From Haliotis rubra (lineage: Eukaryota), in NCBI RefSeq assembly GCF_003918875.1, contig NW_025767612.1, positions 2,294,001 through 2,358,000 of the forward strand: a stretch of DNA of 64,000 nt, written 5' to 3'. Below, in pieces: positions 10,601-61,172 of the stretch (positions within the stretch are counted from its first letter, which is position 1; each line of letters starts with the position of its first letter). The notes beneath the pieces were generated by a model. It was not told the origin of the DNA and ran no database searches. It saw only the letters and a list, made by a program, of their open reading frames with translations. A program made the translations under genes and the position numbers.

Positions 10601-12789
10601 GCAAAATAAAACCCTTTTGGGATTAAGGATTACAAGTATCACTATGTTGATCATACTAGGCAAATACTTGGTAAAAGATTCGGAGAGTGACTGATTGCAT
10701 GTCACATCATGTCCTGGCAGTAATATATTGTATTGCAATATATTGTGATTCAGGTACCCACATTGAAATACATATTGAACTCTACTGAGAGCTGAAGTGT
10801 TTGTGTGATTAGCATTGGTTGTACATGCAGATCCTGTTTTGTACACTACTAAGGCCCTAAAATGTGTGTTATGGTTGCTGAAAGCGATGTAAAACTAAAA
10901 TCACTCACTACAGTATATAACATATAAAGTTTTGTAATAAATTATGAAAGGAAATATCAGTTGTGAATGGAAGTCTGTGTGGGCTTTACTTACATTATTG
11001 AGATAATCACAAAAGTTCATATATGGTTTTACCCACTATACCGTTTCTCAGAAGGTGTTTTGCAATACATGTCATTTGAAAAGTGTTTTTCAGTATACCA
11101 GTATGCTGGCAATGTATGATGTTGTTCATTATATAAGTGGCTGGTTTGTCTCGTCCAGACTTGATTAATATATGCCTTAAATGTTACGGAGTTCCACCAA
11201 CTTTTATACATGTATCTCCATTCTATTATTACCCAGGACCCATTCACCACCATAGCTTGGTTTTAAAAGTAATGCTGCCACCTCCAGTAATCAGTCTCCA
11301 GAATGATATGAAAATTCTCTCACTGGTGGGAGTAATGTGATTGGACGACATTGTGCTGTTTGAATCAGGCTAGAGATTAAGCTGTTTTGTAAAAAGGGGC
11401 CAGGTATTTATCTGGTAAAACAGACTCCATGGACAGATTCCATTCTTTGGTTCCTATAGTTGCAGCTACAGATAGCTGCAATATTACTGATACAGCACAA
11501 AACATTAACTAACTACCCTCCCTTTCGACCTGTGAATATCCGGGTTAGAACTGATTGTCAGTAACCCATGCTAGTCGTAAGATGTGACTAACTTAATCGG
11601 GTGGTCAGACTCGCCGACTTGGTTGACACATGTCACGCGTAGATCGATGCCCATGGAGTTGATCACTTGATTGTCTGGTCCAGACTCATTTATTTACAGA
11701 CCACTGCCATATAGCTGGAATATTGCTGAGTGTGGCGTTAAACAATCCACCAACCCTCTCTATCGTTACCCTCAGTATGTCATGTTCTGATCACATGTGA
11801 TTAATGTAATCTTCTTTGACAGGTTGTATATGGGCCCGCTACTCCCTTGTGATCATCCCAAAGAACTACAATCTTTTCATGGTGAACATCTTTGTCGGTT
11901 TGACAGGAATATTCCAGCTGAGCAGAATTTTTACGTAAGTTTAATGTGCTCCTCATTCTTGTTTAAAATACAAAGATGGTGATAACACATCCTCAGTACA
12001 TTATAAAGCATCAAAACGGAATGATGTTCGAAATGCCATTGTTGTTACTAATAGTAATAGTGTTATTATCTAAGACTGCACAGGGCATTGTGTAGTGTGC
12101 TACTTTATTGATAGATTCTACTATAACAGCACTGGTGTTTTGGCTTGGATTATGGAGTTTGATCTGCATTCTGAACATGAAAGCATTATAATGTCCTTGT
12201 TAGGTGAGGTGAGATGAAATGGTGTTTAACGTTGTACTTAAGAATATTTCGTTCATATGACTATGTGCATGCGTGTGTATGTGTGGCTGCTTGTACTAGC
12301 CCAGACTTAAACTGGTTTTATAGTGCTAGCTCACTGAGACACCATGCCGCAGTTAAGCATGAATACCCCACTCAGACACATTATACTGACTCTGAGCCGA
12401 CCAGTCCTTGCAGTACCCATTGATGCCGAGTGCCTGGTAGGGACCAACAAGTACCGTATTTTAACGTCTTTTGGTATGACATGGCCAGGGAGTGAGCCTG
12501 CGACCTTCCACTCTCTGCTTTTTCCCTAACCACTACACCACGGACACGGTTGAATGTCCTTGTAAATATGGTCTAATGCATACTTTGGTTGGTTACTTTC
12601 TTTCTTGGAAAGTGGACAGTTGCCTTGTTCAAGAAGACTTAATTCTGTGGCACACGTTTTGTATGAATCATGCTGTGTGATAATGCTTTCTGTTGCTGTT
12701 CCAACAGGTATAGAAGATCTCTTCAGGAGGGACAGCCTGCCTTACCAGCCCCAGAAACTAAAGCAGCTGAGGAAAAGAAAACTTCGTAG
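7644..12789 (+). CDS. MPC2: Mitochondrial pyruvate carrier 2 (134 aa, 5 exons)
   Basis: Exons 7644-7728, 9254-9294, 10484-10568, 11823-11934 and 12708-12789, all GT-AG with consistent phases (405 nt). Translation includes PLWNSPAGPKTIFFWAPTFKWALVIAGIGDIARPPEKLS...CIWARYSLVIIPKNYNLFMVNIFVG, the hallmark MPC2 motifs. Confidence 0.96.
8244..9004 (+). mobile_element. Non-autonomous Helentron/HINE-like element in MPC2 intron 1
   Basis: 5' aaaacaag start, subterminal tatcccccgcaac with inverse gttgcgggggata at the 3' end, 3-4 internal ~150-170-bp tandem units, (GACG)n microsatellite, 3' hairpin and A-rich end. Confidence 0.7.
9701..9870 (+). mobile_element. tRNA-derived SINE family A
   Basis: Full copy with TSD tgttttgtcactag. 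Confidence 0.85.
10045..10273. mobile_element. MITE with 16-bp TIR
   Basis: TIRs caggggtggaaataac and gttatttccacccctg, flanked by an apparent 5-bp TSD gacag. Confidence 0.8.
11526..11745 (+). mobile_element. SINE-like family B copy
   Basis: Matches the family consensus. Confidence 0.75.
12202..12550 (-). mobile_element. tRNA-derived SINE family C (V-SINE-like body, (CACCT)n tail)
   Basis: Full copy with TSD aatgtccttgt at 12190 and 12553. Confidence 0.85.
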
Positions 12790-17611: not shown

Positions 17612-20600
17612 CTAAGGCCTGCGTTCTGCATGTTTCAGGACAGGCCTTAGGCATCTTGAAGCGAGTCCTCTTGGTACCAGCTTTGCCCGGAACAATGGGG
17701 GCAGTTTGTCGTCCAGCACAACAAAACACAACTTCAGGGAGTGTTCTAACTTCGAATTAAGACACATATCTAAATAACTTGGAACCTTGTCCATCAACTT
17801 ACAACAAACTTTGTTGAGTGAAAACACAGACTCTATCTTGAGTTCCATCAACCCTTTGTCCGTCTCCTCACATACATCTATGTTGTTGTTGGAACGTAAC
17901 AACTCTGCTACTGGAACTGGGATCAAAGGAATCTTATTTTCATCTTGCTTTTTGATCAACATAACATTGCTAGCATCGATCTGACTCTTTGGTGAAGCCA
18001 TTGTTTCAGCAGAATTCTGTTCGCGAGAAGCCATTGTTTCAGTAGAATTCTGTTCGAGAGAAGCCATGAGGTCAGCAGACGTCAGTTTCACAGGTTTACC
18101 CGAGTTTGCTTGAGCTACCAGGGCAGTGTAAAGAGAAGAGGGGACAACATACACTTTCTTTTGCTGGTTAGCATGGTTTGCAATGTTCAAAGGGGCTCGT
18201 GGAACAGAAGGAACCTGTATAAAATTGGACGAAAATAGTGGAGCCACCGGGACAGTCACATTTGAATTTACAGTTGGTAAATTTTTGGGACAGAGTCTTG
18301 GTTGTACAACATGCACCGGTGCTGACTGAGGGAGCGCATTTGATTTGGCAGTCCCTGACAGATCCTCTTGACGTGTTGATGTAAGGAAGCTGCTTAAAAT
18401 TCTTTGGTTCCTGAGGATGGTCTGCAGAGAATTTTCTTGGGATATTGTTGTGTTTGTGGCCAGTTGTGGAGTCATGGCAGTTGAGATTGTAGTTTTTTGG
18501 GGAGGCAGTACCTTCCGGTAGCTTGGTGTTGGTACCAGTGACTGAACTGAAAACCTTTAGGGAAGCAGTGACACTTTGAGCCGTGCCATTGTGAACTGCA
18601 CTTACATGCTCTTGGCTTAGAAGCTCTGTACTTTTCTTAGCTGAATTTTGCTCTACTGAATTTTGTTCAGAAGGGGGCAAAGAAAACTGTTGATATTCTT
18701 TGATGGCAGTGTCTTCAGGAAGCCTAGTGTTGACCCTTACAACAGAATCTGAATTCTTTTTGTAACTGTGTGACACGCTTCACCACAGTTTGGTTTATTG
18801 CACACAAGTGCTGTTTACTTTGTTCCACTGAATTTGGATGAAGCAAAGTTGTGGGTATTGAAGTTGGATGAAGCAAAGTTGTGGGTATTGAAGTTGTGGG
18901 TATTGAAGTTGTGGGTATTGAAGTTGGATGAAGCAAAGTTGTGGGTATTGAAGTTGTGGGTATTGAAGTTGTGGGTATTGAAGTTGGATGAAGCGAAGTT
19001 GTGGGTATTGAAGTTGGATGAAGCAAAGTGATGGGAACTGAACTTGGATGAAGCACAGATGGGAGCATTGACTTTGCATGAAGTGAAGTTGGGGTCACTG
19101 AACTTGGTTTAGGTGTACTTTTCTGCCTTACAATTTGCTCAACTGAAGTCTGTTCTGGAGATGACAGTTCAACTGAAGTCTGTTCTGGAGATGACAGAGA
19201 AACATTTTCTTTTGGTGTCTCCTTTAATGGTGACATCGGTTTTGGAAGAGGAGATGGCATCTTTGATATTTCTGTCAATCTGGCCACCTCGGTAGAACCA
19301 AAATTTAAACTTTTTTTAACAATTTTTCTACATGGAGAAGATTCATATCCAGAATTCAAAGTTTCCACTTTAATAGATGCTACAACTACAGGACAAGGGT
19401 CTCTGGAGGCATCTGTGTCTGCAGAGGTGTGGCACACTGTTTCACATGTTGTCTGTTTCAAAGTCCCTTCCTTTATAGTTTTATCAATTGATGAAACTTT
19501 TTTGAGATTGGTGGGTCTGGAATTTGAAGGAGCTACCTCCTTCTCCAGAGGTTCTGTCTTGATTTTATTCAACGGAACTGGAAGAACTGAATCTTCAGAC
19601 TTCTGTGAAGAACTTCCTGGTCCTGAGAATGTGGATGTTGTAGATGAACTAGATGAAGGAGAACTGATGCTTTCTTTGTCTTTAACCAGGCATTGAGGCT
19701 GGAAACTTGGGTTTGAAGAAATAGATTTGGTCATGGTTGGTGGAATGAAGACACCAACCTCATGGGGAGGAGATTTTTCCTTCTGATTTGCTTTAGGATC
19801 AGGGACAGGAATGGTTTCAACAGCCACTTCGTCTTCAGTATCATGCAGCCTTACATCTGTTTGTGAGCATGTTTCCTCCATTTCGAGCACAGGGGACACT
19901 TCTCGTGGAGTTACTTTCTTTCGTTTCCTGGGTTGTCTTTTTAAAAGGTTCAACTACTATTTCACATCCATCAAATGGGTCTTTCCTCACTGCTAATGTC
20001 TGTTTTCGTCGAGACGCTTTAGGTGCTGAAGCAGTTTCTTTGGGTACCTCAGCCATCCAAAAGGAGTCTTCTTCTGCACATTTGTGACTGGCCTTTTTCC
20101 GTTTAATCTTGAGTTCTAACTTACTCTGCTCGGACAATGTCTTATGATTCTCCACAGCATTTGCAACTGCCTGAACATAGGCTTGCAGATTGTTTGGAGA
20201 GAATTCTATGGCAAACTTTGGCTTCACCGAGGTTCCAGCAAATGTGATTTTATCTTCTACATTCTCCCTGTGCTGGTCCTTGATGATAACAACAGGCTTG
20301 TCATCATCTTTATCGGCATCTTTCACCTCTGACGTCTTTGTCTCAGTTTCATTTTTTTCTGGTTGCTTTTTATGCATCTCATGCTGCTCTTTGAAATGTT
20401 CTTCAGGGGTAAGCATTTCCAACGGAACTTTGGGAAGAAGACTTGGAAGTTGCTTAGACTGGGCCTTACTGGATTCGTCCTTAGTAACAGATGATGACTT
20501 CTTTTGCTGATTGTTGTCTATTCTGCCCCTGACTTTCTTCAACAAGTTGTTCAGTATTGGGTTGGCAGCAGATGGGCTTTTGTCACTCACAGCTGACTTG

Positions 20601-21744
20601 TCATCTGAACTGATCTCTTTCTTGATCACAGACTTTTTTTTACCAGCAGCATGCTGAGGCTTCAGAATGCTAAAAGTAGTTGACAAGTTGGCAGGTGCGG
20701 CCTGTTCCACTGGGACAAGCTGGAGTTGCCCTGATGGACTTTGGATAATCTGCAAACTGGGCTGTTGGATGACTTGGGGAGTACTTGAAGGCTGTGCAGC
20801 CTCAGGTGGAGCTGCCATTACCTGTACTGCATTCTGAGACTGATTCTGCAAGCTTGGCTGAGGCATGATTTGGGGGTTGCTTGGTGGCTTATTCTTCTTT
20901 AGAGCCTCGGACAGAGCGGTCATTACCTGTACTGCATTCAAAGACTGATTCTGCAAGCTTGGCTGAGGCATGATTTGGGGGTTGCTTGGTGACTTATTAT
21001 TCTTCAGAGCCTCGGACAGAGCGGTCATTACCTGTACTGCATTCAAAGACTGATCCTGCAAGCTTGGCTGAGGCATGATTTGGGGGTTGCTTGGGGACTT
21101 ATTATTCTTCGCAGCCTGTGATGAAGCTGCCATTACCTGTATTGCATTTTGAGATAAGATTTGAATGTTACTTGCGAGAGAATTCTGCAAAACTGAGGCA
21201 CTGGCAGATGGCTGACTTTGCACAATCTGAATGTTTTGTGTGGGTTGGTTCTGTATCACCTGAACAGCATTTGATGCTGGGAAGGATGACGCACTTACAC
21301 ACTGCATAACAGGCAATGTCTGGCCAATCACAGAGGCAGTGCTACCGCCTGCCATGAACTTAGTGCTCGAAATGACATGCAGGGGGCCCCAGTGTTCTGA
21401 AGCATCGGCAGACTTGACATGATCACCGGCGATACTGATGACCCTGGCGATGTGAGGAGCCTCATCGGTCCCTGGCCGACAGATTCAGTACCTTGGGACA
21501 TTCTGGTAAATGTTTGGTTTGGCATTGCGACTGGCACAAAGCCCTGCTGCATTGTGCCAACTTTGGGAATTGGGCCCTCCACACAGCCACTGTTGACAAA
21601 GGTTGTATTTCCTTCAGTCTTGACTTCCGCATTAAAGGAGTGTTGCTTATTCATGATGACATGATGTTTGTATTTGGGAACGACAAAGGTTATATTTCCT
21701 TTAGCTTTGACTTTCTTATGAAAGGATGAGTGTTGTTTCTTCAT
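17612..21744 (-). CDS. Large (~1,380 aa) low-complexity S/T/P/Q-rich putative nuclear protein encoded in one giant exon, with 4 apparent frameshifts
   Basis: Consecutive overlapping ORFs 21328-21744, 19841-21355, 18724-19953, 18168-18776 and 17612-18475 can be joined by 1-nt changes at homopolymers near 21382-21386, 19938-19946, 18757-18761 and 18493-18502. Splice acceptor near 21816. NLS-like PRKRKKV. The true start codon is uncertain. Confidence 0.7.
18828..19065 (-). repeat. Coding minisatellite of 15/30-nt units (TTSIP / LLHPTSIP)
   Basis: aagttgtgggtattg and aagttggatgaagca units alternate in frame. Confidence 0.9.
20810..21145 (-). repeat. Coding 105-nt (35-aa) tandem repeat, about 3 copies
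   Basis: PSNPQIMPQPSLQNQSLNAVQVMTALSEALK repeats. Confidence 0.85.
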
Positions 21745-27676: not shown

Positions 27677-30600
27677 ATGAAGTGGTACGTTTTTGTTGTG
27701 TTAACTATTGTTCTTCTCGACGTGTGTGTGGAAAGCCAGAGTCAAAGGAGAAAGAAGAAGAACAGGAAATACAATATAGTATCTGACAAAAGAAAATGGA
27801 CAGTGTTTCAATCGTATAACAGAAATGATGCCATTCCTACGATGCAACCGACTCCTAGCGCGAACACCAGCATTGGGGGTGGGACCCCCTTCAACGTGGG
27901 GGGTATCTTCCCACATCTGACCCTAACCGCCGACAGCGAGGGTCCCCGGTCTGAATGTGGGACCGGAGCGTTGATGCCGTGGGCGGACAAGCTCTACGTC
28001 GTCTCATATCTCTCCGTCCCTGACGGCGGCAACGGGGACGGGACTCTACTCCATCGACAGCGACTTTAAGGTCAGTGAGTGTACTAGTCTGACATACAGA
28101 CCCTGAAACAGATATACCAAATACAGTTCACGAAAGTCTATAATATGTGGCGAGACTGGGATCCCTTTATTATATACTCATGCCAATAATGGTTGTCACC
28201 CCCTTCATTTTTTTTAATTGGAGAGGGTGTGTGGGGTGGGGTGTGTGTTGGGTTGGGGTGGGGAGGGGGTTGACAACCATTATTGGCATGAGTATATGTT
28301 ATGTACATGTATATAAGTATATAATTTAGAATTTCTTTTTCTGTAAATATGTCAATTCAGAAATTAGATGTTAGTCTGTGCGTGTATTTGGCACACTGTG
28401 GTTATCATAAACCTGGTATCTAAATATCTAAATTAGGATATTAGCTGTGTTCCTCAAAATAAGAAATAAGTTGACGGCAACTCAGTCTGTCCTTCGGGGC
28501 GGTGGGGGGGTAGTCTAGTGGTTAATGTTTTCGCTCGTCACGCCGAAGGCCCGGGTTCGATTCCCTACATGGGTACAATGTGTGAAGCCCATTCATGGTG
28601 TCCCTCGCTGTGATATTGCTGGAATGTTGCTAAAACGGCGTAAAACCATACTCACTCGCTCACTCCATGCTCTCAGGAACAGGGTACTACAGGTGTATAC
28701 CCCGAAGGCAAAGTTCCTTGTGTTGTGTTGCTGTGCGGTGCGGTGCGGTGCGGTGCGGTACGGTGCGGTGCGGTGTGTGGAGATGACAGTGACTGGTGAA
28801 GTTTAATGGGAGGTTCAGGGATCCTGGGTTGTCATTACACAGCAGAGCACTAAAAATGAGCCTGTCCCATCTGAAACTGTCCATCCTATAATATCTAGAT
28901 AAGGACAAACTTTATGGATGAACAACGTCTTTATTCAGGTGATGCGACGTTTCGATACAGATTCTTGTCAAGATTATAATTTAGGAACCGCGTTTTTTTT
29001 TGTAAATAAACTCTGTCAAAAAAGAAACGCAACCCCTGTATTTTAGAGATTTTGATCTGAAGTTTTAGGACGACACGGCATTTTTATTATTTAAGACAGA
29101 AGTCTGAAATTTGGCAGAATAATAACCCAGATGGGCATGTTTAAAATTGTCATTTCAAAAGTCATCTCACAGACACCAGTTTGTCACCAGGGGGGGCGTC
29201 TTTCTCAGTATCTCGTATGAGCACCACGCGCTGCAATCACTGCACGGCATCTCCTTGGACAAGAACGGATAAGACGCCGGATTCTTTCCTGGGGAATGGC
29301 TCTCCACTCCTCCTGCAGTGCAACGGCGAGCTGTTGCAGCGTCTGTGGCGGCGGCTGACGTTGACGTACGCGTCGATCCAGAGTATCCCACAGGTGTTCA
29401 ATAGGGTTGAGGTCTGGTGATTTAGAGGGTCATGGCAAGACATTGACGTTGGAATTCTGCAGAAAGTTCATTGTTGCACGTGCAGTATGAGGCCGGGCGT
29501 TGTCCCGTTGAAAAATCTGTGTCTGTTGGTCAATAATCGGGAGAAGGTGAAGCTCTAACACGTGGTTGATGTAACGTTGGGCTGTCAGGTTCCCTGGAAC
29601 GATCACCAAGTCTGATTTCTGGTTGTATGAGATGGTTCCCCAAACCATGACGCTTTCTCCGCCAAATCTGTCCACCTGTCGGACGCAGATGGGCGCAAAA
29701 CGTTTATGACGTCTCCTATACAGACGCTGTCTTCCGTCGTGACGTTGCAAAAGAAAACGTGATTCATCAGAAAACCAGATTCGCCTCCAGTTTTGTAAAG
29801 TCTGTATCCTTACGTTGTTGCACCACCTGAGTCGTCGGCGTCGATGTAGGGGGCGTAGTACAGGTCCAACAACTGGTCTACAGGCACGTAAACCCGCTTC
29901 TTTCAGACGGTTCCTAATCGTTTGAGCTGACACTCTCCTCAAACCTGGTATTTGTGTGGCAGTCACGGTTGGTAGGGCATGCCGATTACGCAGGTGATGG
30001 ACCCGGATGTACCGATCTTGAAGGGGGGTCGTGATTCTTGGCCTTCCACTTCTCGGGCGATCGTTGGTCAAATTGAAGTTGTTGTAGCGGCTCCAAAGTC
30101 GGGATATCGTTGTCTTTTTTGACAGAGTTTATGTTCATGTTAGTCTAACGACATCTATAAATGCTCTCCCTTATCCCTCCTTATTCTATTACGGAAGACG
30201 TTATGGGGAGTATGGGCTTACTTCGGGAGTGAATGAGCTACATGGAGTATACATTCTAACCCGGATTTTCAAGGGTTAATCAAATTTTACTAAGTAGGCA
30301 CCTTCCAAATGCCGACCGCCTCCGTGGTGTAGTGGTTAGTCCGCCCGGAGAGCGGAAGGTCGCGGGTTCGATCGCCGACCGGGTCATACCAAAAGACGTT
30401 AAAATATGGTACTTGTTGGTCCCTGCCTGGCGCTCGGCATTAATGGGTACAACAAGGACTGGTCGGCTCGGAGTCAGTATAATGTGTCTTAGTGGGGTAT
30501 TCATATGCTTCACTGCGGCATGGTATCTCAGTGGGTAGCACTATAAAACCAGCTCAAGTCTGGGCTAGTACAAGAAGCCGCACATACACATACACACGCA

Positions 30601-30713
30601 TGCACGTCGTCATATGAGCGAAATATTCTCAAGCACGACGTTAAACCCAATTTCACCTCACCTCACCATCCAAATGCCGATGAAAGAGTTATAATTACCT
30701 ACATTCACCCTAA

Positions 30714-30772
<59 letters not shown>

Positions 30773-33700
30773 ATATATTAAAAAAAACAATAACAACTAC
30801 AAAATTAATGTGAGCTTTCCACGAGAAAATTGCTCATATATTCCTGGGCTTCCATCACGTCACGTTTATGTAAGGATAAACTTATCATACAATGGTGTTG
30901 TTGATGTTGCAGCTAACCAAACTAGCGAACCATCGCTCGACGTATGCCAACCGTCTCCTGCACAAAGAATCCAATCAGATTGTCATCGGAGCCTGGTTGA
31001 TAGATGTCCATGGCAACGTGTCCACATTTCAAGACTTGTTGCATGTCCGAGTTGCAGCCACAGCAGAACACTTAACGGACCCCAAAAATCTGGTAAGGTG
31101 AAAAGTGGGTCTCGTCCTCGATTACCCAGCGTATTGTTATATCGCATGACAGACTGGATAACCGAGGGGGAAGGGAGCCTGAATCCCGTCTGCCTGTTGG
31201 CTATTTTTTGAGTCGTTGCACGTGGAGTCCATGCTTTTAATTTAAAGGGCCAAATCGTCCTTCAACTCATGACGCTGGTAACACAGAAATACAAATTAGA
31301 TAAAATTTCACACAAACCTGAAATAAGGTTCTTGAGAGGCATATAGAAGTTGGTATTCAAGTATAAAACAAAATATAATGGATGTCAACTGTATTGCATA
31401 CACAAGGTTTCTGGGCTTTTCCTTACCCATTCGTCAGGTGAATGAGCACAGATAGAATGTGTCTGACGCAGGGGCAAGGGATAGCCCAGAAACGTTATGC
31501 ATACAATACAGAAGAAGTTGACATCCATAATATTTTGTCTTATACACCTGAAATATTTGATAATTCCTCGGCCATAGTCAAATATTTTGTAATTGTACAT
31601 AGTGTTATTATCTATTACTTATTACGAATCTCTTTATTCATCGTCGGTTTCTGGAAGACAGGCCTTTATGGGATATGAGAGGGATGTTGCGTCACACATA
31701 CATCGTAAATTCTTGAATATTGGCTTCTGTTGAGGATAAAGTTATCTTTTATAAGTTCGTGAGATGTTCGTTTATGTGATTAGAAGGATACCTAAGAATG
31801 TCTGAAAACCCATAATACGAACATAGTTTATAGAATACCGTCACTGTTTCTACCTGAAACGTGCCCGCATACCGTATATATGTAGATTGGTGCTGTGTGG
31901 TCCTGTGCATAGAGCTCAGGTCACAGATCAGTTGAAGTTGAGCAAAGTTAAGCAAGAGTCCTTGGATGGGGGACCGTGTTTGGCAGCTTGACTCCTGAGA
32001 GTTTCTTGGACGTCAGTCCTGCCCCACAAGGAAACACATGTTATACATGTGGTCTCACCTGAGGCAAGTGAGTTTGTTCAAACTTGCCCATGTTCACCCA
32101 GCAGAACATAGGTACCCGGTAGGATAGGTTATGCGACTATTAACCTTCTTGGGGCTCACGGCAGCTTGGGTTATCCGGGGTAATACTAATCAGATTGTGT
32201 GTTAGCGCTTTGAGCATGTGCCTTGTACATGAAAAAGGCGCATTATATATTCACAATTATTATTTATTATTAGAATGTATGATATAATAACTCGTCAACA
32301 GGTGTACATGCTGGGCATGGATGGTCCGCTGTGGGAGTGTAACGTCTACAACTTGACCTGTGTCCAGCTATTTGACCTGGTTCAGACACTAGGGATTCCA
32401 GCCAATGAGGGCGAGCAGCCCCACTTCAAGGCCGCTCACACCATGAACGACAGACTCGTGGTGACGAGCAACACTTTCGAAGAGGCAGACTTTGAAGGGT
32501 TACAATACTTAAATATCTCTTGGAAATACATAGATGTACTTTGCTGCGCCAGCACCTTCTGTTGGCAGGATGACAGAACCATTCTTCGAGGTTTTTTTCT
32601 GTTTGCGAAGGGAAAGGGACCGGTGCAGGATCTTAATGTAGGGCAGAAATCTTAATTCCTCAAGTTCTGAGATGTCTCGTGGTACAAGATAGGATTGGTG
32701 ACATATGCTACTCACACTTTGCTAAGGATCACAAAAATCCCAAACTTTACTTAAATATAGATTTATAATTTGAAATTGTATATATTTAAAACTAGATAAA
32801 TAATGATATGGTAACCCCTCTATAGGCAAACAGCCACTTTAATCTAACCTTATACACTTGATACATGAGTAACCATCAAAATGTTTTTTATGGCACCAAT
32901 CAACCATTTTGCAAATCGTGGAACGAGTCACTGACAAGTACACAACACCTGTGAATAGCAGGTATGGGATCCACAAGATGCAGTGACATACTGAAACCTA
33001 GGATACATGCTTACAAAAAGTTTATATATTTTAAACCAAATTAGACCCCACATCATAGTTTTCTTTGAATCAATGGTTTGATCCTTAGCAAAGTGTGAAT
33101 AGTATATATAAAAGATCGGGAATGGGGGTGGTGGTGGTGTGGCTTTGTTTACAGGTAGTTACTACAGAAAACAGTGAGAAATCAAATAAGTTCGTGATCA
33201 TTACCACCCACCCCCTAACCATCCAAATTTTAAGAATAAACATATTTATCTGATCTGATATCACACTTTTGAACGGGTCACTAAAAACATGTCTCTGTAC
33301 AGCTAGTCTCTGAAATGAACATATTTTAAAGGGAAAAAAGTTTTTAAATTAAAATAGAATACAATCAAAAAGAGCCCAGATACTTTTTCATTTTCAGAAA
33401 TGTGTTAATCTACACTTTCCATGGGCTACATTGGGTATATTTGTTTCAGGGTCTGTATGACAGACTATGGTAGAGAGATAAATGATTGACTTTCAGGTCA
33501 TGGTAACCAACGGCTTTACAATGGGCCGCAAATGATGGTAACAATTTAATTGTAGCAATAGCTTGCTAAGTCTGCTATGGAAACCCTATGGAAGGACAGT
33601 TCTGGGTGATAAATCAATCTATCAGTTATTAGACACATTAGTGCCTTAGTTTCATACAGGGTATTAATTACGTCTATTCCTGGAAATGACGGTGGCGGAT

Positions 33701-36310
33701 GTCCTTCTTTCATTGTACTCAACTGTATCTAGCATTCAAGATGGCGGGCGTCTGGCAGAGTGGAAAGGCCCAGGAAGCAACTGGACAATCCTAGCGAAGA
33801 CGGCGTTCGTCGAGGTGGCTGGCAGAAGGAACTTCGGGAAGGTCATCTACGCTCTCGGCTGGGACTACCGTTCCGTCATCCTCAAGGTCTTTAATGGCGA
33901 CGACGTCGGTGAGGTCATAGCTGTTGCCTTTTAGCAATCATTCTGTTCAAATTAGACGTAATACGGTAGTGGCAGCGCTAAGACTGTTTGAAGAACGAAA
34001 CCCAGAATACAGGAAACGGATTCCTACTTCCGCATTTGAAGAGTACCATTATCGTGGACTAGCAAGGGTTTATAACATGTAACGCTTTGAGGGCGGTTCA
34101 TGCCAAATTTCGTATTGATATTGGCTACCAACTCTCATTATGTGAAACACTACTTAATTCACATTTATGCAAAACGGCATGATAAACCCCAATAAAATGA
34201 TCGACTAAATGATAGCGTTCATTGACAACTTTGTTCCGTATGCCACTATCTTTACGACCCATGTAAACAGTGAAATAGATGTATATAAAATAGTCTCCAA
34301 AGATGCCTATTTCATTATCAAGGGTATATTTCAATCCTGACAAGTCAAATGTTACATTTTTCTCAGCTTACAGAAACTGGCAGACCTATCGTCTACCAAA
34401 GGCTAGCCATGCATACGACCATCTGTGGCAGACGGAATGGCCCCGCATCAGAGAGGTCGAGACTGAACGCTACCTAATGGACATGCACGGAATGTTCTAT
34501 GAGTTGTCTCCCCTTGGTTGGGCCGGAAGCACGTGGGGTGTCCGACCAGTGTGTCAGCACTTGAGGATGATCCCCGACTACACGTCGTTCAGAGGGATGC
34601 TGGTCCTAGGTGGAAACCAGGTACGACCAGCGTCTTGAGTGAGTGAGTGAATGAATTTTAAGCCGCTTTTAGCAATATTTCAGCAATATCACGGTGGGGG
34701 ACACCATATATGGGCTTCACACATATTGTACCCATGTGGGGAATCGAACTCGGGTCCTCGGCGTGACGAGCGAACCAGTTGCGTGGATAGCCTATATAAA
34801 TATACTATAAATAAATAAATTTAGCCACTAGGTTACGTTGTATTATAGTTTGTGGGAACGTTGTATTTGACGTTGTGGGAAAGGTATAATACTGACTACA
34901 TTCATAGAATGACAATAGGTTGTATAAATAAAGGATGGAGAGCGGAGAATGAATTGTTCGATTTACGGTCGTGTCATTTCAAAGACATTATTGTATGGGC
35001 TTTATGTTACCGTGCCCGGCGTTCGACGTTAAAGGGATAATACGTCTCGCAGTCAGTATGCTGTGTCTGAGAGATATATCCATAGTAGAACTGTGGCATG
35101 GTATCTCAAACGGCAAAAGTAATTCATATAGCGGGGACCTCGACACCTGTGTTTCTGTTCTAGGTATCCTCCATCTTCGACAACAACGTGGTGACGGGGC
35201 AGGCCCAGTCTGGTCTATGGTTTGGGAAGACTGACGACCTGTGGGGGTTCGGCAAGCCGCAGGGGTGGGGCGCTGTGTGGAGGAGGGACAGGGTGGAGGC
35301 GAACACCGTCTCCGACCCCTACCTTATGACTGGTTTTGACAAGAAGGTGCTCTTCATAACGATCCTCAATTCTACGTCATCAAGTGTGACGTTTGACGTT
35401 GAGGTCGACATTACGGGCGCTGCAGGTACAGTTCAGATGGCTTTTGATGTTTGTATTGTTTTAATTATGAGTGAGTGAGTGAGTTAATATTTAACGTCAC
35501 ATCGGCAATATCTCAGCCATATCGTGACGAAGACAATTTATACAATACAAAAAGGAAAACATTGTGAAGAGTTAAACCTGTCAACGATGGACAGTAAAAA
35601 TCCTAGAGTATCACAGATATGAATATAAAACTAGAATGTAAATCTAAAACATTTTAATTGAAGAAGACAGTACAATATAAAACACGGGCTATAGATCGCC
35701 AACAACTGAAGGTAGATCACCATACTAGGGTCCATGGGGACTTACAGTGCCTTTGCTACCTGCATGGACCCTAGCTGGATTTACACCATCCCCTCAGCCG
35801 CTGGCGACTGCAGGAAGAGTTAGCCAAAATTTAAAATAACAAACATACTACGATTAAAAAGTATGGTTGAGCAAACTTGACTTTGAAAGTTTTTTGGGAC
35901 TTACGTACCCTCTCAGGAGTTTTAATTATGAAAATGCTACATTGGTATACATAATTCTATTTTTTACTTGATACCTAAATAAATTAACACACCAATTTGA
36001 TCGGCTTGGTGCTTTTGGGGTAGGATATCCATGTTTACGAGGCCATGGTACCTCATTTGGCAAGTACTACTAAACTGGCATTGGCACACACATACACACA
36101 CGCACATGCACACGCACACGCACACTGAGACTAGGTTTTCCTGCATTCTGTGTTTCAGCGCACATGGCGGGAGAAGAGTGGTTCCCCGTGGTGAGTCTGA
36201 CTGTGACGAAATCCGATTTTTTCGTGTTTCCCACTGGCTTCAGTGCCCACTGGGTGAGGCTGGTAGCTCACCAAGAAGCTGTGGTGACTGCCTACTTCCA
36301 CTACACCTAG
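27677..36310 (+). CDS. Secreted ~537-aa uncharacterised protein, 7 exons, bacterial-like sequence
   Basis: Exons 27677-28070 (one extra G in the run 28034-28037), 30913-31092, 32302-32498, 33733-33908, 34367-34620, 35164-35425 and 36159-36310, GT-AG and phase-consistent. Signal peptide MKWYVFVVLTIVLLDVCVES. Motifs SECGTGALMPWADKLY, YANRLLHKES, WQTYRLPKASHAYD, TEWPRIRE, GQAQSGLWFG, SDPYLMTGFDKK and GFSAHWVRL. Confidence 0.85.
28496..28666 (+). mobile_element. SINE family A copy
   Basis: A and B boxes plus the family tail. Confidence 0.8.
29009..30129 (-). mobile_element. Tc1 (DD34E) transposon, 5'-deleted and nonsense-inactivated, in intron 1 of the secreted-protein gene
   Basis: TIRs aactctgtcaaaaaaga and tcttttttgacagagtt with TA TSD. 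Transposase ~30110-29205 carries DRPRSGRPR, WFSDES, FQRDNA and P*PSKSPDLNPIEHLW (TGG>TGA at 29430-29432), with 34 residues between the second D and the E. Confidence 0.92.
30314..30667 (+). mobile_element. tRNA-derived SINE family C, full length
   Basis: A and B boxes, cagtgggtagcactataaaa core, (CACCT)n tail, and TSD tccaaatgccga. Confidence 0.85.
30713..30774. repeat. (TAAA)n microsatellite
   Basis: About 15 perfect units. Confidence 0.95.
31340..31560. mobile_element. Inverted pair of Penelope-like terminal fragments
   Basis: agcccagaaacgttatgcatacaata...gttgacatccataatattttgtc and its inverse at ~31345-31417. Another copy lies at ~53970-54052. Confidence 0.45.
31888..32272 (+). mobile_element. 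Degenerate SINE with 5S-like segment, Deu/Nin-like core and (TAT)n tail
   Basis: gatcagttgaagttgagcaa...agtccttggatgggggaccg (5S-like), gttcacccagcagaacataggtacccgg (Deu/Nin-like), and tail agcgctttgag...aaaggcgc...tattat. Confidence 0.5.
35471..35918 (-). mobile_element. ~450-bp non-LTR insertion with (ACTC)n tail
   Basis: TSD gttttaattatga on both sides. The tail is related to those of the other SINE families. Confidence 0.65.
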
Positions 36311-40583: not shown

Positions 40584-42077
40584 TTAACTATCAAACCCGC
40601 AATCATCCTGACTGGACCGAGTCTGAAGTAACTTCCGCCGCCAATAACTTATTTCCAAGGCCAGTTTTTCTTGCTCCATTGCCATTTTCTCCTTTTCTAT
40701 GTCTAATCTCTCTTGCTCCAGTCGCCCATGAGCTCTCTCCTGGTCCCGAGCCAGTTCCAGACGCTCACGTTCCAAGGCAAGCTTCTGACGCTCCTGCTGC
40801 ATCTCCAGAGAAACTCTTTCCCGATCCATCCTCAGCTTCTCTCTCTCAACATCCTTCTCCAGGTTCAGCTTCTCTTTCTCCATGAGAATCTTCTGCATCT
40901 CCACTGCCATCTGTTCCTGTTCCATCTTCAGTTTCTCTCTGTCAAGCTTTAATTTCTCTCGCTCCAAGGACAAGGAGTCTCGCTCACTTGCTAACAGCTC
41001 TTCATGAAGCTTCATTGACTGGTCATCTAAACGCCTCCTCTTTGCACTTTCTTGAATACTGTTCTGTTTGAAACCTGATTTGTTACTTGTTGAGGTATTT
41101 GAGGTTGTAAAGGAAGAGCACGAGGTTAGGGTATCAGTTAGGATTTGAATGTCATTTGTTAGATTTAGATTTCTGTTTCGGTGGTTTCTTGAATGACTTG
41201 TGTTTCCCTGATTTGAGGTCTGTGATGATGGTTTGGATGGCAAAAATCCGCTGCTACTTGATCCTTGAGGTCTGTTTGCTGCACTGGTATGAGGAACATC
41301 TTGCTCATTATGAGGCAATGATCCATTGCTTGTGAATTTTGATTGCTGTATAGATGATAATGCTGACTGACTAGAGCCCTCCAACTTTGAGAGGTTATTA
41401 TTGCTTGATTCGGGCATGTTGAGTGGCAACTGGTCATCTATTGGCTGAAGAGAGGTAGGGGTTGATACTGGAGGTATGTAGACCTGATCCTGTGCACTCA
41501 ACACAGAGGAGTTCTCACACTTGCTGCTTTCACCAGAAGAGTGTCCTGGGCTACTTGCAAACCCTGGAACATCCTGGATACTGTTGTCTTGACTGTCCTC
41601 ATTGGCAAGATCTATCTCTATTTTCATGGCATGGGGATTAATGTCCAAGTCTTGAACCCCATCCTCCTGAGTTTCATCGGCCATGCCCAAGATCTGCAGA
41701 CTGAAATTTGATACGGGTGGAGGAGCAAGCCCTTCAGTTTGATATTTCTTGAACTTTGAAGCTTCTTTTCGAGCAGTGCAGTTTAAGTTCTGCCACCGTT
41801 TCCTAATCTCATCAACAGATCTTGAAACACCTGGTGTCATTTCATTGATACCATCACATATCAACTGCCAGACTTCCCTCTTCCTTTCATTGGTAGCACT
41901 ATCCAATGCCTTCTCATTGAGAACAAACTTGTACTTGCGTACCATGTCAATGATGTACTGCGTCTCCTTTGCACTGAAATTTGGTTTTCTGTTAAGTCTT
42001 TCAAACCCAAGGTCGGCCATTGCAAAGGCATCCTGTGGGCTTAATGTCAGATTAAAACAGTTCATGGACTGATCCAT
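40584..42077 (-). CDS. MSANTD4: Myb/SANT-like DNA-binding domain protein with C-terminal coiled coil (MSANTD4-like, 497 aa)
   Basis: RKPNFSAKE...KREVWQLI...RSVDEIRKRWQNL forms a Myb_DNA-bind_5-type domain. The C-terminal LEREKL/ERERL heptads match MSANTD4 architecture. Single coding exon with an upstream acceptor at ~42230. Orthology was not tested. Confidence 0.75.
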   Translation of the reverse strand: MDQSMNCFNLTLSPQDAFAMADLGFERLNRKPNFSAKETQYIIDMVRKYKFVLNEKALDSATNERKREVWQLICDGINEMTPGVSRSVDEIRKRWQNLNCTARKEASKFKKYQTEGLAPPPVSNFSLQILGMADETQEDGVQDLDINPHAMKIEIDLANEDSQDNSIQDVPGFASSPGHSSGESSKCENSSVLSAQDQVYIPPVSTPTSLQPIDDQLPLNMPESSNNNLSKLEGSSQSALSSIQQSKFTSNGSLPHNEQDVPHTSAANRPQGSSSSGFLPSKPSSQTSNQGNTSHSRNHRNRNLNLTNDIQILTDTLTSCSSFTTSNTSTSNKSGFKQNSIQESAKRRRLDDQSMKLHEELLASERDSLSLEREKLKLDREKLKMEQEQMAVEMQKILMEKEKLNLEKDVEREKLRMDRERVSLEMQQERQKLALERERLELARDQERAHGRLEQERLDIEKEKMAMEQEKLALEISYWRRKLLQTRSSQDDCGFDS

Positions 42078-60189: not shown

Positions 60190-61172
60190 GTTTACATCCA
60201 ATCTGTACCTATATGAAACCAATAAAGAGCTTCCAATGTCAGTGCGATTTAATTTTTTTTAAATCATCTAACCATATACATTATTAAAGTTGTTCAGACA
60301 TCTATTCACTCATTGAATATGCTTAACTGTGAGATACAAATCATGATACAAAATGTGTCACTCCAAAAATGTACATCACTGTTATAGAGCTTCAAAACAA
60401 TTCTTGACAAATGTTGGAATAAAAATGTAAAAAGTGATGACAGTAAATGAAAGCAATCAAATGATCAAAAAGCTCAACAGTGTCCCCTCTGGCTCATACC
60501 CAAATAAACAGTTGTCTATGTTTACTGTGTATGCAATAACCAGGTGAAATAACAAACTGTTGTGGAGCATGTCATGACAATTGCATTGGACTTGATCATG
60601 TTGATTGAGCTTGTTTACACACATAATCATTTTAAATCCAAAATGGATATTTTATGAAATTGGTTTCTTCTATATACAAAAAAGCATTAAGACAAATGCT
60701 CATCATGTGTCCTTATTTTATATTTTCTCATTCTACACATTCTTATCCTCAAATTTAATCCAGTTCCGTGTGTTTCAATGTAAATTACAAAGCATAACAA
60801 TTCATCTGCGATGACGTGTTCAAACGTCCAGATTGTTCAAGACAAACCAATTCACTGAAACTAACGGCGATTAATACTTATATTTCGAGGGGAAAAAATG
60901 TGGTTTAAACTTCTTATCACATTAGTGGTGTATGAATTCGTATGCCTAATACAGTTGCATTCTACTGGTTGTCCTGGGGTGCCCTTTTCAGATTGCGGAC
61001 GTTTTGTTTGTAAACATCATCATGACATCGATGATAGAATATTCATGTATGAATTAAATCGGTGTCATTTTATTTAGCAATATTCTCACTTTGCGCGAGC
61101 GGTGCAATTAAACCACGGCTTTAACAAATACAGTCAGAGTAATGAAATATTGAAATATTGAAAAGAAATAAC

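What the first reader, a model, noticed from the sequence alone, without database searches (positions are those of the whole stretch)
27677..36310. Candidate bacteria-to-animal horizontal gene transfer, now an intron-containing gene for a secreted protein
Seen: a phase-consistent 7-exon gene with a signal peptide, several N-glycosylation sequons (NTS, NVS, NLT, NWT, NST) and a W/G/H-rich body. I recognise no animal domain in it. From memory, not a search, the colinear motifs G(G)IFPHL..SECGTGA..PWAD.L, YANR..H.ESNQ..IG, HLTDP.N.VY, WxTYRLPKASH.YD...TEWPRIR, MHGMF, GQ.QS.LWF, SDPYL..GF and terminal F..GFSAHWVR...TA.F.Y match an uncharacterised family of Planctomycetes/Verrucomicrobia/Bacteroidetes proteins. 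Spliceosomal introns full of host SINEs and linkage to MPC2 and NDC80 argue against contamination. Inference: a domesticated bacterial beta-rich enzyme, possibly acting on algal or other glycans in a grazing mollusc.
Basis: partly seen in the sequence, partly recalled or inferred. Interest (0 to 1): 0.85.

Follow-up and report, generated by a model that had tools for sequence, protein, structure and literature searches.

The report
Ancient bacterial-type propeller gene in abalone
This is a real, spliced, expressed abalone gene for a secreted beta-propeller protein of a large uncharacterised, mostly bacterial family, but molluscs did not pick it up recently: a sponge and a choanoflagellate carry it with introns at the same places.

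Summary
The seven coding blocks at 27677-36310 (+) are real. They are colinear with a 475-aa Edaphobacter protein, and exon 5 is 62-72% identical to proteins of Acidobacteria, Chloroflexi and Planctomycetes. The window has one G too many at 28034-28037. As written, exon 1 hits a TAA one base before its donor. All four public runs lack that G, so it is most likely an assembly slip.

One run holds a contig joining exons 1-2-3. dN/dS against the Haliotis cracherodii orthologue (92.6% identical, same seven exons) is 0.09. MPC-like and NDC80 genes flank it, so it is not contamination.

A mollusc-specific transfer is not supported.
- Homologues occur in many gastropods, a chiton, the sponge Sycon, the choanoflagellate Monosiga and protists.
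- All fall in one eukaryotic clade (97/96), nested among bacterial sequences when rooted on divergent bacterial forms (a choice, not an inference).
- The mollusc part follows the species tree.
- Haliotis shares two exact intron positions with Sycon, one also with Monosiga.

Any bacterial origin therefore predates animals. The gene was then lost from most animal groups.

The protein has a signal peptide, a seven-bladed propeller and a jelly-roll domain. It has no Pfam family and no solved relative. Bacterial homologues sit beside GH139, GH141-like, GH29, GH2 and GH43 genes, so a glycan-processing role is likely but unproven.

The parts
27677..28070 (+). Exon 1: start codon, signal peptide (about 27677-27733), low-complexity linker and the first propeller strands. 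Phase-0 donor AAG|GTCAGT at 28071.
   Evidence: ORF and frames. Aligns to bacterial residues 38-86. The spliced contig X3 record 17 ends here.
28034..28037 (+). GGGG run carrying one surplus G relative to all public runs. It produces an apparent +1 frameshift in the window.
   Evidence: Frames. table 4: 'left out 1' at 28034 in X1, X2, X3 and X4 (one contig each). The H. cracherodii orthologue reads ..GNG-TGLYSIDSDF...
28071..30912 (+). Intron 1, holding high-copy interspersed repeats (about 28450-28650 and 30250-30850) and a Tc1/mariner-like transposase remnant (29430-30071, minus strand).
   Evidence: Depth of 10^4 to 10^7, table 2. Pfam HTH_Tnp_Tc3_2 and DDE_3. The intron is removed in X3 record 17.
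30913..31092 (+). Exon 2 (..YANRLLHKESNQIVIG..HLTDPKNL). The phase-0 intron that follows sits at the same position in Sycon and Monosiga.
   Evidence: (X3 record 17 maps 30911-31091).
32302..32498 (+). Exon 3 (VYMLGMDGPLWEC..EQPHFKAAH..).
   Evidence: X3 record 17 and X1 record 7 map 32301-32498. Same length as in H. cracherodii.
33733..33908 (+). Exon 4 (..GGRLAEWKG..GWDYRSVILKVF..). The phase-1 intron that follows lies within 4 alignment columns of a phase-1 intron in Sycon.
34367..34620 (+). Exon 5, the most conserved segment (WQTYRLPKASHAYDHLWQTEWPRIREVETERYLMDMHGMFYEL..). The phase-0 intron that follows sits at the same position in Sycon.
   Evidence: 62-72% identity to bacterial loci L001-L012. 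380 library hits. Intron comparison.
35164..35425 (+). Exon 6: the end of the propeller (GQAQSGLWFGKTDDLW) and the start of the C-terminal jelly-roll domain.
36159..36310 (+). Exon 7: the end of the jelly-roll domain (FPTGFSAHWVR..TAYFHYT) and the stop codon at 36308-36310.

Best explanation
Window 27677-36310 holds an intact, transcribed, seven-exon Haliotis gene. The single-base frameshift in exon 1 is most likely an assembly error. It encodes a secreted protein of about 537 aa: a signal peptide, a disordered linker of about 50 residues, a seven-bladed beta-propeller and a C-terminal jelly-roll domain.

The protein belongs to a large family with no Pfam model and no solved structure. The family is overwhelmingly bacterial. 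The eukaryotic members form one clade, which lies inside the bacterial diversity when the tree is rooted on the divergent bacterial long forms. That fits one old bacterium-to-eukaryote transfer.

That event predates animals. The abalone gene descends vertically from a gene that already had introns in the common ancestor of choanoflagellates and animals. It was kept in gastropods, chitons and a calcareous sponge, and it was not seen in other animal groups.

Inferred, not shown: the protein acts on glycans in the secretory or digestive pathway, as a hydrolase, a lyase or a binding partner. The substrates would probably be fucose-containing or otherwise decorated glycans. This rests on the bacterial homologues, which sit in polysaccharide-utilisation loci next to GH139, GH141-like, GH29, GH2 and GH43 enzymes or next to sugar ABC transporters.
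For: Gene reality and integrity:
- Colinear tblastn match to a bacterial protein and GT-AG exon model.
- Identical lengths for E2-E7 in H. cracherodii, and dN/dS 0.09 at dS 0.48.
- One letter left out at 28034 in all four runs, and contig X3 record 17 joins exons 1, 2 and 3.
- Host genes on both sides.

Family:
- 18 bacterial loci found with exon 5.
- 380 representative hits with exon 5.
- More than 5000 hits at E<=1e-50 with the full-length orthologue.
- Diverse bacterial architectures: single unit, tandem units, one unit plus a half unit.

Age in eukaryotes:
- Homologues in Sycon, Monosiga, a foraminifer, diplonemids and uncultured eukaryotes whose contigs carry eukaryotic genes.
- Careful tree: eukaryote clade 97/96, molluscs 98/88, and a mollusc topology equal to the species tree. 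The eukaryote clade is nested in bacteria when rooted on the long forms.
- AU test for Holozoa, p = 0.44.
- Shared intron positions. Chance of at least 2 matches is 1.6e-4 under uniform placement.

Fold:
- pLDDT 87.6 for the full-length model of the orthologue.
- Seven-bladed propeller matches at Z about 20.
- Jelly-roll C-terminal domain, pLDDT 96.5, best Z 11.4.

Function hint:
- PUL and sugar-transport neighbours.
- The DUF5703 neighbour is GH139 (PMC12282258). The beta-helix neighbour resembles GH141 BT_1002.
- A GH139-like gene also lies next to the homologue in a eukaryotic contig.
Against: - The root is not inferred. Nesting within bacteria depends on rooting with the divergent long forms, and two nodes on that path are weak (81/82, 72/69).
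- Sycon as sister to molluscs has mixed support (87/17).
- Deep relationships inside the eukaryote clade are unresolved, so eukaryote-to-eukaryote transfers cannot be excluded.
- Absence from other animal phyla rests on the best 120 rows of two word-filtered searches, not on genome-wide tblastn.
- The runs laid were Logan contigs with guessed RNA/DNA labels, and only introns 1-2 were seen spliced.
- Function: no catalytic residues were identified, and no specific structural relative stands above generic propellers.
- Gene neighbourhood in bacteria is circumstantial, and several neighbourhoods are unrelated to glycans (DXP synthase, proteases).
Confidence: 0.72

Rival explanations
1. One reading: a lineage-specific transfer from bacteria into a mollusc ancestor, later domesticated by intron and signal-peptide gain.
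For: The family is mostly bacterial. Among named animals it was seen only in molluscs and one sponge. Identity to bacteria is about 50% over the full length.
Against: Mollusc proteins are closer to Sycon, Monosiga and protists than to any bacterium. There is a single eukaryote clade at 97/96. Two exact intron positions are shared with Sycon, one of them also with Monosiga (chance 1.6e-4 and 7e-5). Signal peptides are also present in the Sycon, Monosiga and protist proteins.
Confidence: 0.05
2. Several independent or eukaryote-to-eukaryote transfers: one eukaryote acquired the gene from bacteria, and it then spread horizontally among phagotrophic protists and into animal lineages. The Haliotis-Sycon-Monosiga resemblance would then reflect transfer of an intron-bearing gene, not vertical descent.
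For: The distribution is very patchy (Holozoa, Rhizaria, Discoba, unknown protists). The eukaryote backbone is unresolved. An intronless copy (P0165, locus L027) branches next to the animals. A neighbour pair with GH139 in a protist contig resembles the bacterial arrangement.
Against: Within molluscs the gene tree equals the species tree from chiton to heterobranchs. Holozoa monophyly is not rejected. Shared introns are simplest under vertical descent.
Confidence: 0.15
3. The copy in this window is a pseudogene, inactivated by the +1 frameshift in exon 1.
For: As written, the window has TAA at 28067-28069 in the ATG frame, before the donor.
Against: All four runs lack the extra G, including a genomic contig with 0 other differences over 346 nt (X2 record 9). 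Transcript-like contigs reach depth of about 500. dN/dS is 0.09 and there is no other lesion.
Confidence: 0.05
4. The protein is not glycan-active. It could instead be a non-enzymatic binding or scaffold propeller, or an enzyme for small molecules such as a lyase or lactonase.
For: The top structural rows are virginiamycin B lyase and YncE, tied with WD40 scaffolds. There is no CAZy-type sequence match. Some bacterial neighbours are not glycan-related. Some bacterial members have TAT-like leaders.
Against: Placement is recurrent inside SusC/SusD loci with GH139, GH141-like, GH29, GH2 and GH43, next to sugar ABC transporters, LacI and a sulfatase. Eukaryotic contigs carry GH139-like, GH39 or GH3 neighbours. 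The C-terminal jelly-roll is of the kind appended to glycosidases.
Confidence: 0.3

Closest known systems
Haliotis cracherodii 'uncharacterized protein' (P0167) and its gastropod and chiton orthologues
   Same: 92.6% identical over 525 aa. Same seven exons, with identical lengths for E2-E7. Orthologues are present in Patella, Gigantopelta, Nucella, Aplysia, Elysia, Lymnaea, Biomphalaria, Bulinus, Physella, Arion, Bradybaena, Candidula and Liolophura.
   Different: The window copy carries one surplus G in exon 1, which is absent from the public runs. None of these proteins has a described function.
Sycon ciliatum LOC135817565 and Monosiga brevicollis MONBRDRAFT_9225
   Same: 64% and 59% identity. 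Same domain layout and signal-like N-termini. Shared phase-0 intron at HLTDP..L|VYMLGMDG in all three, and a shared phase-0 intron at GGNQ|VSS with Sycon.
   Different: Other introns differ: Sycon and Monosiga share one after PWAD that Haliotis lacks. The Monosiga annotation carries an insert of about 48 aa that looks like an unspliced intron.
Uncharacterised bacterial propeller family (for example Edaphobacter sp. HDX4, L001:9206-10633; Ktedonobacter; Planctomycetota; Bacteroidota PUL proteins)
   Same: Colinear over the whole mature protein at about 50% identity, with the same motifs and the same propeller plus jelly-roll model.
   Different: The bacterial genes have no introns and carry TAT-like leaders, lipoprotein-type leaders or none. 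Many are tandem or one-and-a-half-unit fusions of 800-1400 aa. They are embedded in PULs or sugar-transport operons.
Seven-bladed beta-propellers of known structure (virginiamycin B lyase 2z2n, YncE 3vgz, WD40 proteins)
   Same: Overall fold of residues 74-427: Z 20.4, rmsd 3.7 A, 269 aligned residues for the top row.
   Different: 7-12% identity. Dozens of unrelated propellers tie within 1-2 Z units. There is no sequence relationship, so no function can be carried over.
GH13_1 alpha-amylases in animals (PMC7003070, abstract only, seen)
   Same: An evolutionary pattern of the same kind: per that abstract, an enzyme family found in some unicellular eukaryotes such as choanoflagellates and in non-bilaterian animals, with horizontal transfer and gene loss shaping its distribution in bilaterians.
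   Different: A different fold and a known function. In the present case the ultimate source appears to be bacterial, and the retaining bilaterians are molluscs.

Membership tests
Lineage-specific bacteria-to-animal HGT | Homologues are mainly prokaryotic | tested here: met
   Exon 5 found 18 bacterial loci. Bacterial architectures are diverse, and there are thousands of hits. Most hits are unlabelled metagenome proteins, so the bacterial majority is an inference from the labelled rows and the clade they fall in.
Lineage-specific bacteria-to-animal HGT | The recipient's sequence branches inside a bacterial clade, apart from other eukaryotes | tested here: not met
   All eukaryotes form one clade at 97/96. 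Molluscs group with Sycon, not with any bacterium.
Lineage-specific bacteria-to-animal HGT | Absent from sister animal lineages and from the closest unicellular relatives | tested here: not met
   Present in Sycon ciliatum and Monosiga brevicollis, with shared intron positions.
Lineage-specific bacteria-to-animal HGT | Physically integrated in the host genome and expressed (not contamination) | tested here: met
   Spliceosomal introns with host repeats. MPC-like and NDC80 flanks. A spliced contig. The orthologue lies on a 76.7-Mb scaffold.
Uncharacterised bacterial/eukaryotic propeller family (no Pfam model) | Full-length colinear similarity with the family motifs (PWAD, YANR, HLTDP, YRLPKASH..EWPRIRE, GQxQSGLWFGKTDDLW, SDPYLMTGF, GFSAHWVR) | tested here: met
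   The profile built from the 76-sequence alignment A1 matches all bacterial forms.
Uncharacterised bacterial/eukaryotic propeller family (no Pfam model) | Seven-bladed propeller plus C-terminal jelly-roll | tested here: met
   Models at pLDDT 87.6 and 96.5. Family clusters in the ESM Atlas match at TM 0.77-0.81. The models were made on the H. cracherodii orthologue, not on the window protein itself.
Olfactomedin-like domain (the UniRef name of the Arion homologue) | Match to the OLF domain profile | tested here: not met
   No Pfam family at E<=1 for the Arion, Haliotis, Sycon, Monosiga, chiton or protist proteins. The fold is seven-bladed, whereas olfactomedin domains are five-bladed (general knowledge).
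Known propeller-type carbohydrate-active enzymes (GH or PL families) | Sequence or specific structural similarity to a classified family | tested here: not met
   No Pfam, NCBIfam or PDB sequence match. Sialidase, GH43 and arabinanase rows in Foldseek have TM below 0.3. Nothing stands above generic propellers.
Known propeller-type carbohydrate-active enzymes (GH or PL families) | Genomic association with glycan-utilisation genes | tested here: met
   SusC/SusD, GH139, GH141-like, GH29, GH2, GH43, an esterase, LacI, a sugar ABC transporter and a sulfatase.
Known propeller-type carbohydrate-active enzymes (GH or PL families) | Catalytic activity on a glycan | not testable with these tools
   This needs recombinant protein and substrate screens.
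Pseudogene | A disabling lesion that is real in the organism, with relaxed constraint | tested here: not met
   The only lesion, the extra G at 28034-28037, is absent from all four runs. dN/dS is 0.09.

The most novel reading that the evidence does not exclude
The family is a new class of carbohydrate-active enzyme. It has no Pfam model, no structure and thousands of members. Its candidate role is acting with GH139, GH141 and GH29 fucosidases on methylated, fucosylated or otherwise decorated glycans. The ancestor of choanoflagellates and animals inherited it, introns included, from an ancient bacterial donor. Molluscs and calcareous sponges would then be the only animals that kept this digestive capacity.
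Probability: 0.3. Interest if true: 0.7.

Novelty: new member of a known kind. Interest (0 to 1): 0.5.

Why it matters
This corrects an attractive but wrong story. What looks like a bacterial gene captured by a grazing mollusc is an old holozoan gene that most animals appear to have lost. Alien-looking genes need sponge, choanoflagellate and protist sampling, plus intron comparison, before HGT into animals is claimed.

It also flags a very conserved protein family: about 50% identity between bacteria and animals and dN/dS of 0.09 within Haliotis. The family has no Pfam model, no solved structure and no published function that I could find. In bacteria it recurs next to fucosidase-rich polysaccharide-utilisation genes. 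That makes it a concrete candidate for a new glycan-active enzyme family, testable with recombinant protein.

On the practical side, the window's assembly has a homopolymer error that would break the gene's annotation.

Tried and rejected
- Pfam and NCBIfam on each exon, on bacterial homologues and on full-length animal and protist proteins gave nothing, even at E<=1.
- PDB by sequence, with a single protein and with a 76-sequence profile, gave only chance-level rows.
- Foldseek against PDB gave generic propellers with TM<=0.39 by query.
- VIA-align wide search: seven-bladed propellers tie at Z 18-20, with no informative leader.
- ESM Atlas by features and by shape returned only the family's own unnamed clusters. 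One is auto-named 'arylsulfotransferase', without Pfam support.
- The C-terminal domain folded alone is a generic jelly-roll. XepA/YomS, GOLD, the GH29 C-terminal domain and CBM6/32 match at Z 7-11, which assigns no function.
- Literature: no paper mentions the locus tags of the Aplysia, Monosiga, Gigantopelta, Sycon, Physella or Liolophura genes. 'DUF5703' as a word finds nothing. The Monosiga HGT catalogue's held supplement does not list protein 9225.
- A donor in the ATG frame of exon 1 does not exist, and GC donors give poorer matches to the homologues.
- Contamination is rejected (introns, host flanks). Pseudogene is rejected (reads, dN/dS).
- I could not hand the spliced window protein itself to the database, fold or family tools. 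I used exon references and the 92.6%-identical H. cracherodii protein as a proxy.
Full report
**What is in the window**

ORF listing and three-frame translation show seven open coding blocks on the + strand between 27677 and 36310. A tblastn of a 475-aa Edaphobacter sp. HDX4 ORF (L001:9206-10633) against the window finds exactly these seven blocks. They are in order, cover bacterial residues 38-475, and nothing else in the 64 kb matches significantly; the only other row has E = 5.2.

I enumerated GT/GC-AG pairs that keep the frames open and chose those that best fit the homologues. This gives exons 27677-28070, 30913-31092, 32302-32498, 33733-33908, 34367-34620, 35164-35425 and 36159-36310. 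The annotated orthologue in Haliotis cracherodii (P0167, locus L026) has seven exons of 396, 180, 197, 176, 254, 262 and 152 nt. The window has 394, 180, 197, 176, 254, 262 and 152 nt. The splice model is therefore independently supported.

In the window as written, the ATG frame of exon 1 runs into TAA at 28067-28069. That is one base before the only GT donor, at 28071.
- The +1 frame reads ..GTGLYSIDSDFK|GTCAGT. This matches the bacterial GTGLGLYRIDDTLK and the H. cracherodii ..GNGTGLYSIDSDF.
- The exons sum to 1615 nt, one more than 538 codons. The switch of frame lies at the GGGG run at 28034-28037.
- I laid four public runs on 27850-33849. Every one of them (X1 and X2 of organism A, X3 and X4 of organism B) leaves out one letter at 28034 (table 4).
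- X2 record 9 is a genomic contig that crosses the exon 1/intron 1 boundary, with no other difference over 346 nt.

The surplus G is therefore most likely a homopolymer error of the assembly, or at most private to the assembled individual. The gene is intact.

**Expression and selection**

X3 record 17 is a 621-nt contig. It lies on 27852-28068, then on 30911-31091, then on 32301-32498. This is exons 1, 2 and 3 joined as predicted, within the 1-2 nt ambiguity of the alignment (table 8).
- X1 has contigs covering only exons, at word depth of about 500.
- These are Logan contigs whose RNA/DNA labels are guesses, and only introns 1 and 2 were seen removed.
- Against H. cracherodii, dS is 0.48, dN is 0.043 and dN/dS is 0.09 over 537 codons. 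That is strong purifying selection.

**Host context**

MPC-family exons lie on the + strand at about 9.2, 10.5 and 11.9 kb. NDC80 exons lie on the - strand at 53-60 kb, with Pfam hits to Ndc80_HEC and NDC80_loop. Intron 1 holds a Tc1-like transposase remnant. It also holds repeats with depths of 10^4 to 10^7 in the runs. Contamination is excluded.

**The family**

No exon and no full-length homologue hits any Pfam or NCBIfam model, even at E<=1. Neither a single sequence nor a 76-sequence profile finds a solved structure.
- Exon 5 alone retrieves 18 bacterial loci. Identity is 62-72% in Acidobacteriota, Chloroflexota, Planctomycetota, Gemmatimonadota and Chitinophagales, and 45-50% in Bacteroidota long forms.
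- Exon 5 also finds 380 cluster representatives at E<=1e-3 in the 1.84-billion-protein library.
- Full-length queries give more than 3400 hits (E<=1e-10) and more than 5300 hits (E<=1e-50).
- Bacterial members come as single units of about 460 aa, tandem double units of about 940 aa, and one unit plus a C-terminal half unit of about 820 aa and longer.

**Where the abalone gene belongs in the family**

The window protein is 92.6% identical to H. cracherodii, so the window comes from another Haliotis species. Identity to other groups is as follows:

| Compared with | Identity |
|---|---|
| Most other gastropods and a chiton (three divergent copies in Elysia and Bulinus, 52-63%) | 63-76% |
| Sponge Sycon ciliatum | 64% |
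| Choanoflagellate Monosiga brevicollis | 59% |
| A foraminifer and two diplonemids | 57-59% |
| Best labelled bacteria | 50-52% |

Cluster look-ups gave the names of these proteins. Unlabelled metagenome proteins in the same similarity band sit on eukaryotic contigs:
- L019 carries the DNA primase large subunit, C2H2 zinc fingers and protein kinases.
- L023 carries a PI3K_C2 domain and a GH3 gene split into three pieces.
- L027 carries ALG3, a kinase and a retroelement.

**Phylogeny**

A careful IQ-TREE run (68 rows, LG+C20+F+G4 by PMSF) gives these results:
- One branch separates all labelled bacteria from all eukaryotes (97/96).
- Molluscs are monophyletic (98/88).
- Sycon is their sister, with mixed support (87/17).
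- The order inside molluscs is chiton, then (Patella,(Gigantopelta,Haliotis)), then (Nucella, Heterobranchia). To my knowledge this agrees with published mollusc phylogenies.
- Rooted on the divergent long and tandem forms, the eukaryote clade is nested among short-form bacteria. The nodes on that path are 100/100, 81/82, 72/69 and 95/91.

The root is a choice, not an inference. An earlier 85-row quick tree gave the same split at 100. An AU test does not reject molluscs + Sycon + Monosiga as one clade (delta lnL 2.0, p = 0.44). I left out proteins longer than 640 aa from the first tree and used only their first unit in the second.

**Introns**

I solved the exon structures of the Sycon gene (L024, 6 exons) and the Monosiga gene (L025, 5 exons) exactly against their annotated proteins. 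I then mapped all introns on one alignment.
- A phase-0 intron between HLTDP..L and VYMLGMDG falls in the same column in Haliotis, Sycon and Monosiga.
- A phase-0 intron between GGNQ and VSS is shared by Haliotis and Sycon.
- A phase-1 intron just before the YRLPKASH block lies 4 columns apart in the two animals, in a gappy stretch.
- A phase-0 intron after PWAD is shared by Sycon and Monosiga only.

With uniform random placement, two or more exact coincidences between Haliotis and Sycon have probability 1.6e-4. A site shared by all three has probability 7e-5. Real introns prefer certain sites, so these figures are optimistic.

Together with the tree, this places an intron-bearing copy in the common ancestor of choanoflagellates and animals. 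A transfer from bacteria into molluscs is therefore not supported. An older, single bacterium-to-eukaryote transfer is the simplest reading of the nested eukaryote clade. Later eukaryote-to-eukaryote spread among protists cannot be excluded.

Among named animals, the two homologue searches show only gastropods, a chiton and Sycon in their best 120 rows. Any other animal at 55% identity or more should have appeared there. This is not a genome-level proof of absence.

**Structure**

The model has pLDDT 87.6 and pTM 0.83. It shows:
- an N-terminal helix (residues 2-15, the signal peptide);
- a disordered stretch (residues 17-55);
- 28 strands between about 77 and 430, arranged as a seven-bladed propeller;
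- a separate beta domain (residues 435-538).

VIA-align gives Z 20.4 (rmsd 3.7 A, 269 residues) to virginiamycin B lyase and 20.3 to YncE. Dozens of WD40 proteins tie within 2 Z units. Foldseek gives only generic propellers. In the ESM Atlas only the family's own clusters match (TM 0.77-0.81), and everything else is at or below 0.45.

The C-terminal domain folded alone (pLDDT 96.5) is a jelly-roll. The best rows are XepA/YomS (Z 11.4), GOLD domains, the C-terminal domain of a GH29 fucosidase (8.3) and CBM6/CBM32 (about 7.5).

The most conserved stretch, YRLPKASHAYDHLWQTEWPRIREVE, is a loop between blades 5 and 6 with many invariant charged residues. It is a natural candidate for the active or binding site, but this is inference only.

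**Function from context**

In the Bacteroidota loci L013, L014 and L016 the homologue lies in a SusC/SusD locus with these neighbours:
- GH43 with a GDSL esterase, and GH2;
- a DUF5703_N protein immediately upstream;
- a parallel beta-helix protein immediately downstream;
- in L013, a GH29 fucosidase as well.

L018 has SusC/SusD, the homologue and GH29. The DUF5703 neighbour matches PDB 9HYQ at E = 9e-257. That entry comes from the study of GH139 2-O-methyl-fucosidases (PMC12282258). The beta-helix neighbour matches 9RX2 strongly and GH141 BT_1002 weakly.

Other bacterial contexts are as follows:
- In Chloroflexota (L002, L004) the gene follows a sugar ABC transporter and a FAD oxidoreductase, with a sulfatase nearby.
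- In Acidobacteria it sits next to LacI and a TonB-type outer-membrane protein.
- In Gemmatimonadales it sits next to a DUF4832/GH42-like gene.
- In Brocadiaceae it sits next to a SASA esterase and a TonB receptor.
- Some neighbourhoods are unrelated to glycans: DXP synthase and proteases.

In eukaryotic contigs the neighbours include a GH139-like gene (L019), GH39 (L021) and GH3 (L023).

Some bacterial members have TAT-like leaders. Others have no leader and sit behind ABC importers, which suggests action on imported oligosaccharides.

The best-supported mechanism is therefore glycan processing, possibly of fucosylated, methylated or sulfated glycans. In animals and protists the protein would be secreted or lysosomal, for digestion. 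I put this at roughly 0.4-0.5. No catalytic residue, substrate or activity has been shown.

Carriers include predatory (Nucella), terrestrial (Arion, Bradybaena), freshwater (Biomphalaria, Lymnaea) and vent (Gigantopelta) snails, a sponge and bacterivorous protists.

**Known or new**

The orthologues are in databases as 'uncharacterized protein'. The Arion entry's name, 'Olfactomedin-like domain-containing protein', is not supported: there is no OLF hit, and the fold has seven blades. I found no paper on any of the locus tags. The Monosiga gene is not found in the one held supplement of the 2013 Monosiga HGT catalogue.

The evolutionary pattern is a known kind: an ancient gene of prokaryotic type, kept patchily in animals. 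The abstract of PMC7003070 describes a similar pattern for GH13_1 amylases. The protein family itself is undescribed.

**Verdict**

The earlier notes of this scan did not bear on this gene.

Noticed in passing
window 28034-28037: The assembly carries one G more than all four public runs. This homopolymer-type error would break automatic annotation of the gene, and other genes of this assembly may suffer the same.
   Followed up: yes
window 29430-30071 (-) and 62792-63247 (+): Tc1/mariner-like transposase remnants. The first gave Pfam hits to HTH_Tnp_Tc3_2 and DDE_3. The first lies inside intron 1 of the gene. The second ORF has a similar N-terminal sequence.
   Followed up: partly
window 28450-28650 and 30250-30850: Extremely high-copy interspersed repeats, with word depth up to 10^7 in a DNA run. 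The loose-end consensus looks tRNA-like (GGTAGCCTAGTGGTTAAAGCG), which suggests tRNA-derived SINEs.
   Followed up: no
window about 9270-11900 (+): Three exons with mitochondrial pyruvate carrier motifs: GPKTIFFWAPTFKW, RPPEKLSLYQS and IWARYSLVIIPKNYNLFMVNIFVG.
   Followed up: partly
window 53066-60222 (-): NDC80/HEC1 exons (Pfam Ndc80_HEC and NDC80_loop). The region 57.0-58.1 kb also holds a long imperfect (SHSL/TFTR)n-type repeat, which creates overlapping long ORFs in other frames.
   Followed up: partly
window 40584-42077 (-): A single-exon 497-aa ORF with a Myb/SANT-like (MADF-type) DNA-binding domain and a long E/K/L-rich coiled-coil tail.
   Followed up: no
window 17612-21744 (-): Very long open frames of S/P/Q/T-rich low-complexity protein with internal repeats (SIPTT, NAVQVM..). 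The one ORF tested (19841-21355) has no Pfam family.
   Followed up: no
L025:3831-4411 (Monosiga brevicollis MONBRDRAFT_9225): The annotated protein has an insert of about 48 aa (ESYVPTFCLSPPS...LLPQQ) that is absent from all homologues. It is probably an unrecognised intron in the 2008 gene model.
   Followed up: no
L019:8001-11939 (uncultured eukaryote contig): The family gene lies tail-to-tail with a GH139-like (DUF5703_N) gene. The same pair is adjacent in the Bacteroidota PULs L014 and L016. This could be co-transfer or a functional pair.
   Followed up: partly
P0169/P0214 (Gigantopelta); P0174/P0184/P0225 (Bulinus): Some gastropods have two or three copies on the same scaffold. These are local duplications, and one Bulinus copy is much more divergent.
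   Followed up: no
P0192, P0196, P0210, P0211 and the 800-1400-aa bacterial proteins: Bacterial members occur as tandem double units, or as one unit plus a second half unit (profile positions about 280-499). The two units of the tandem proteins fall in different clades of the tree, so the fusion is old.
   Followed up: partly
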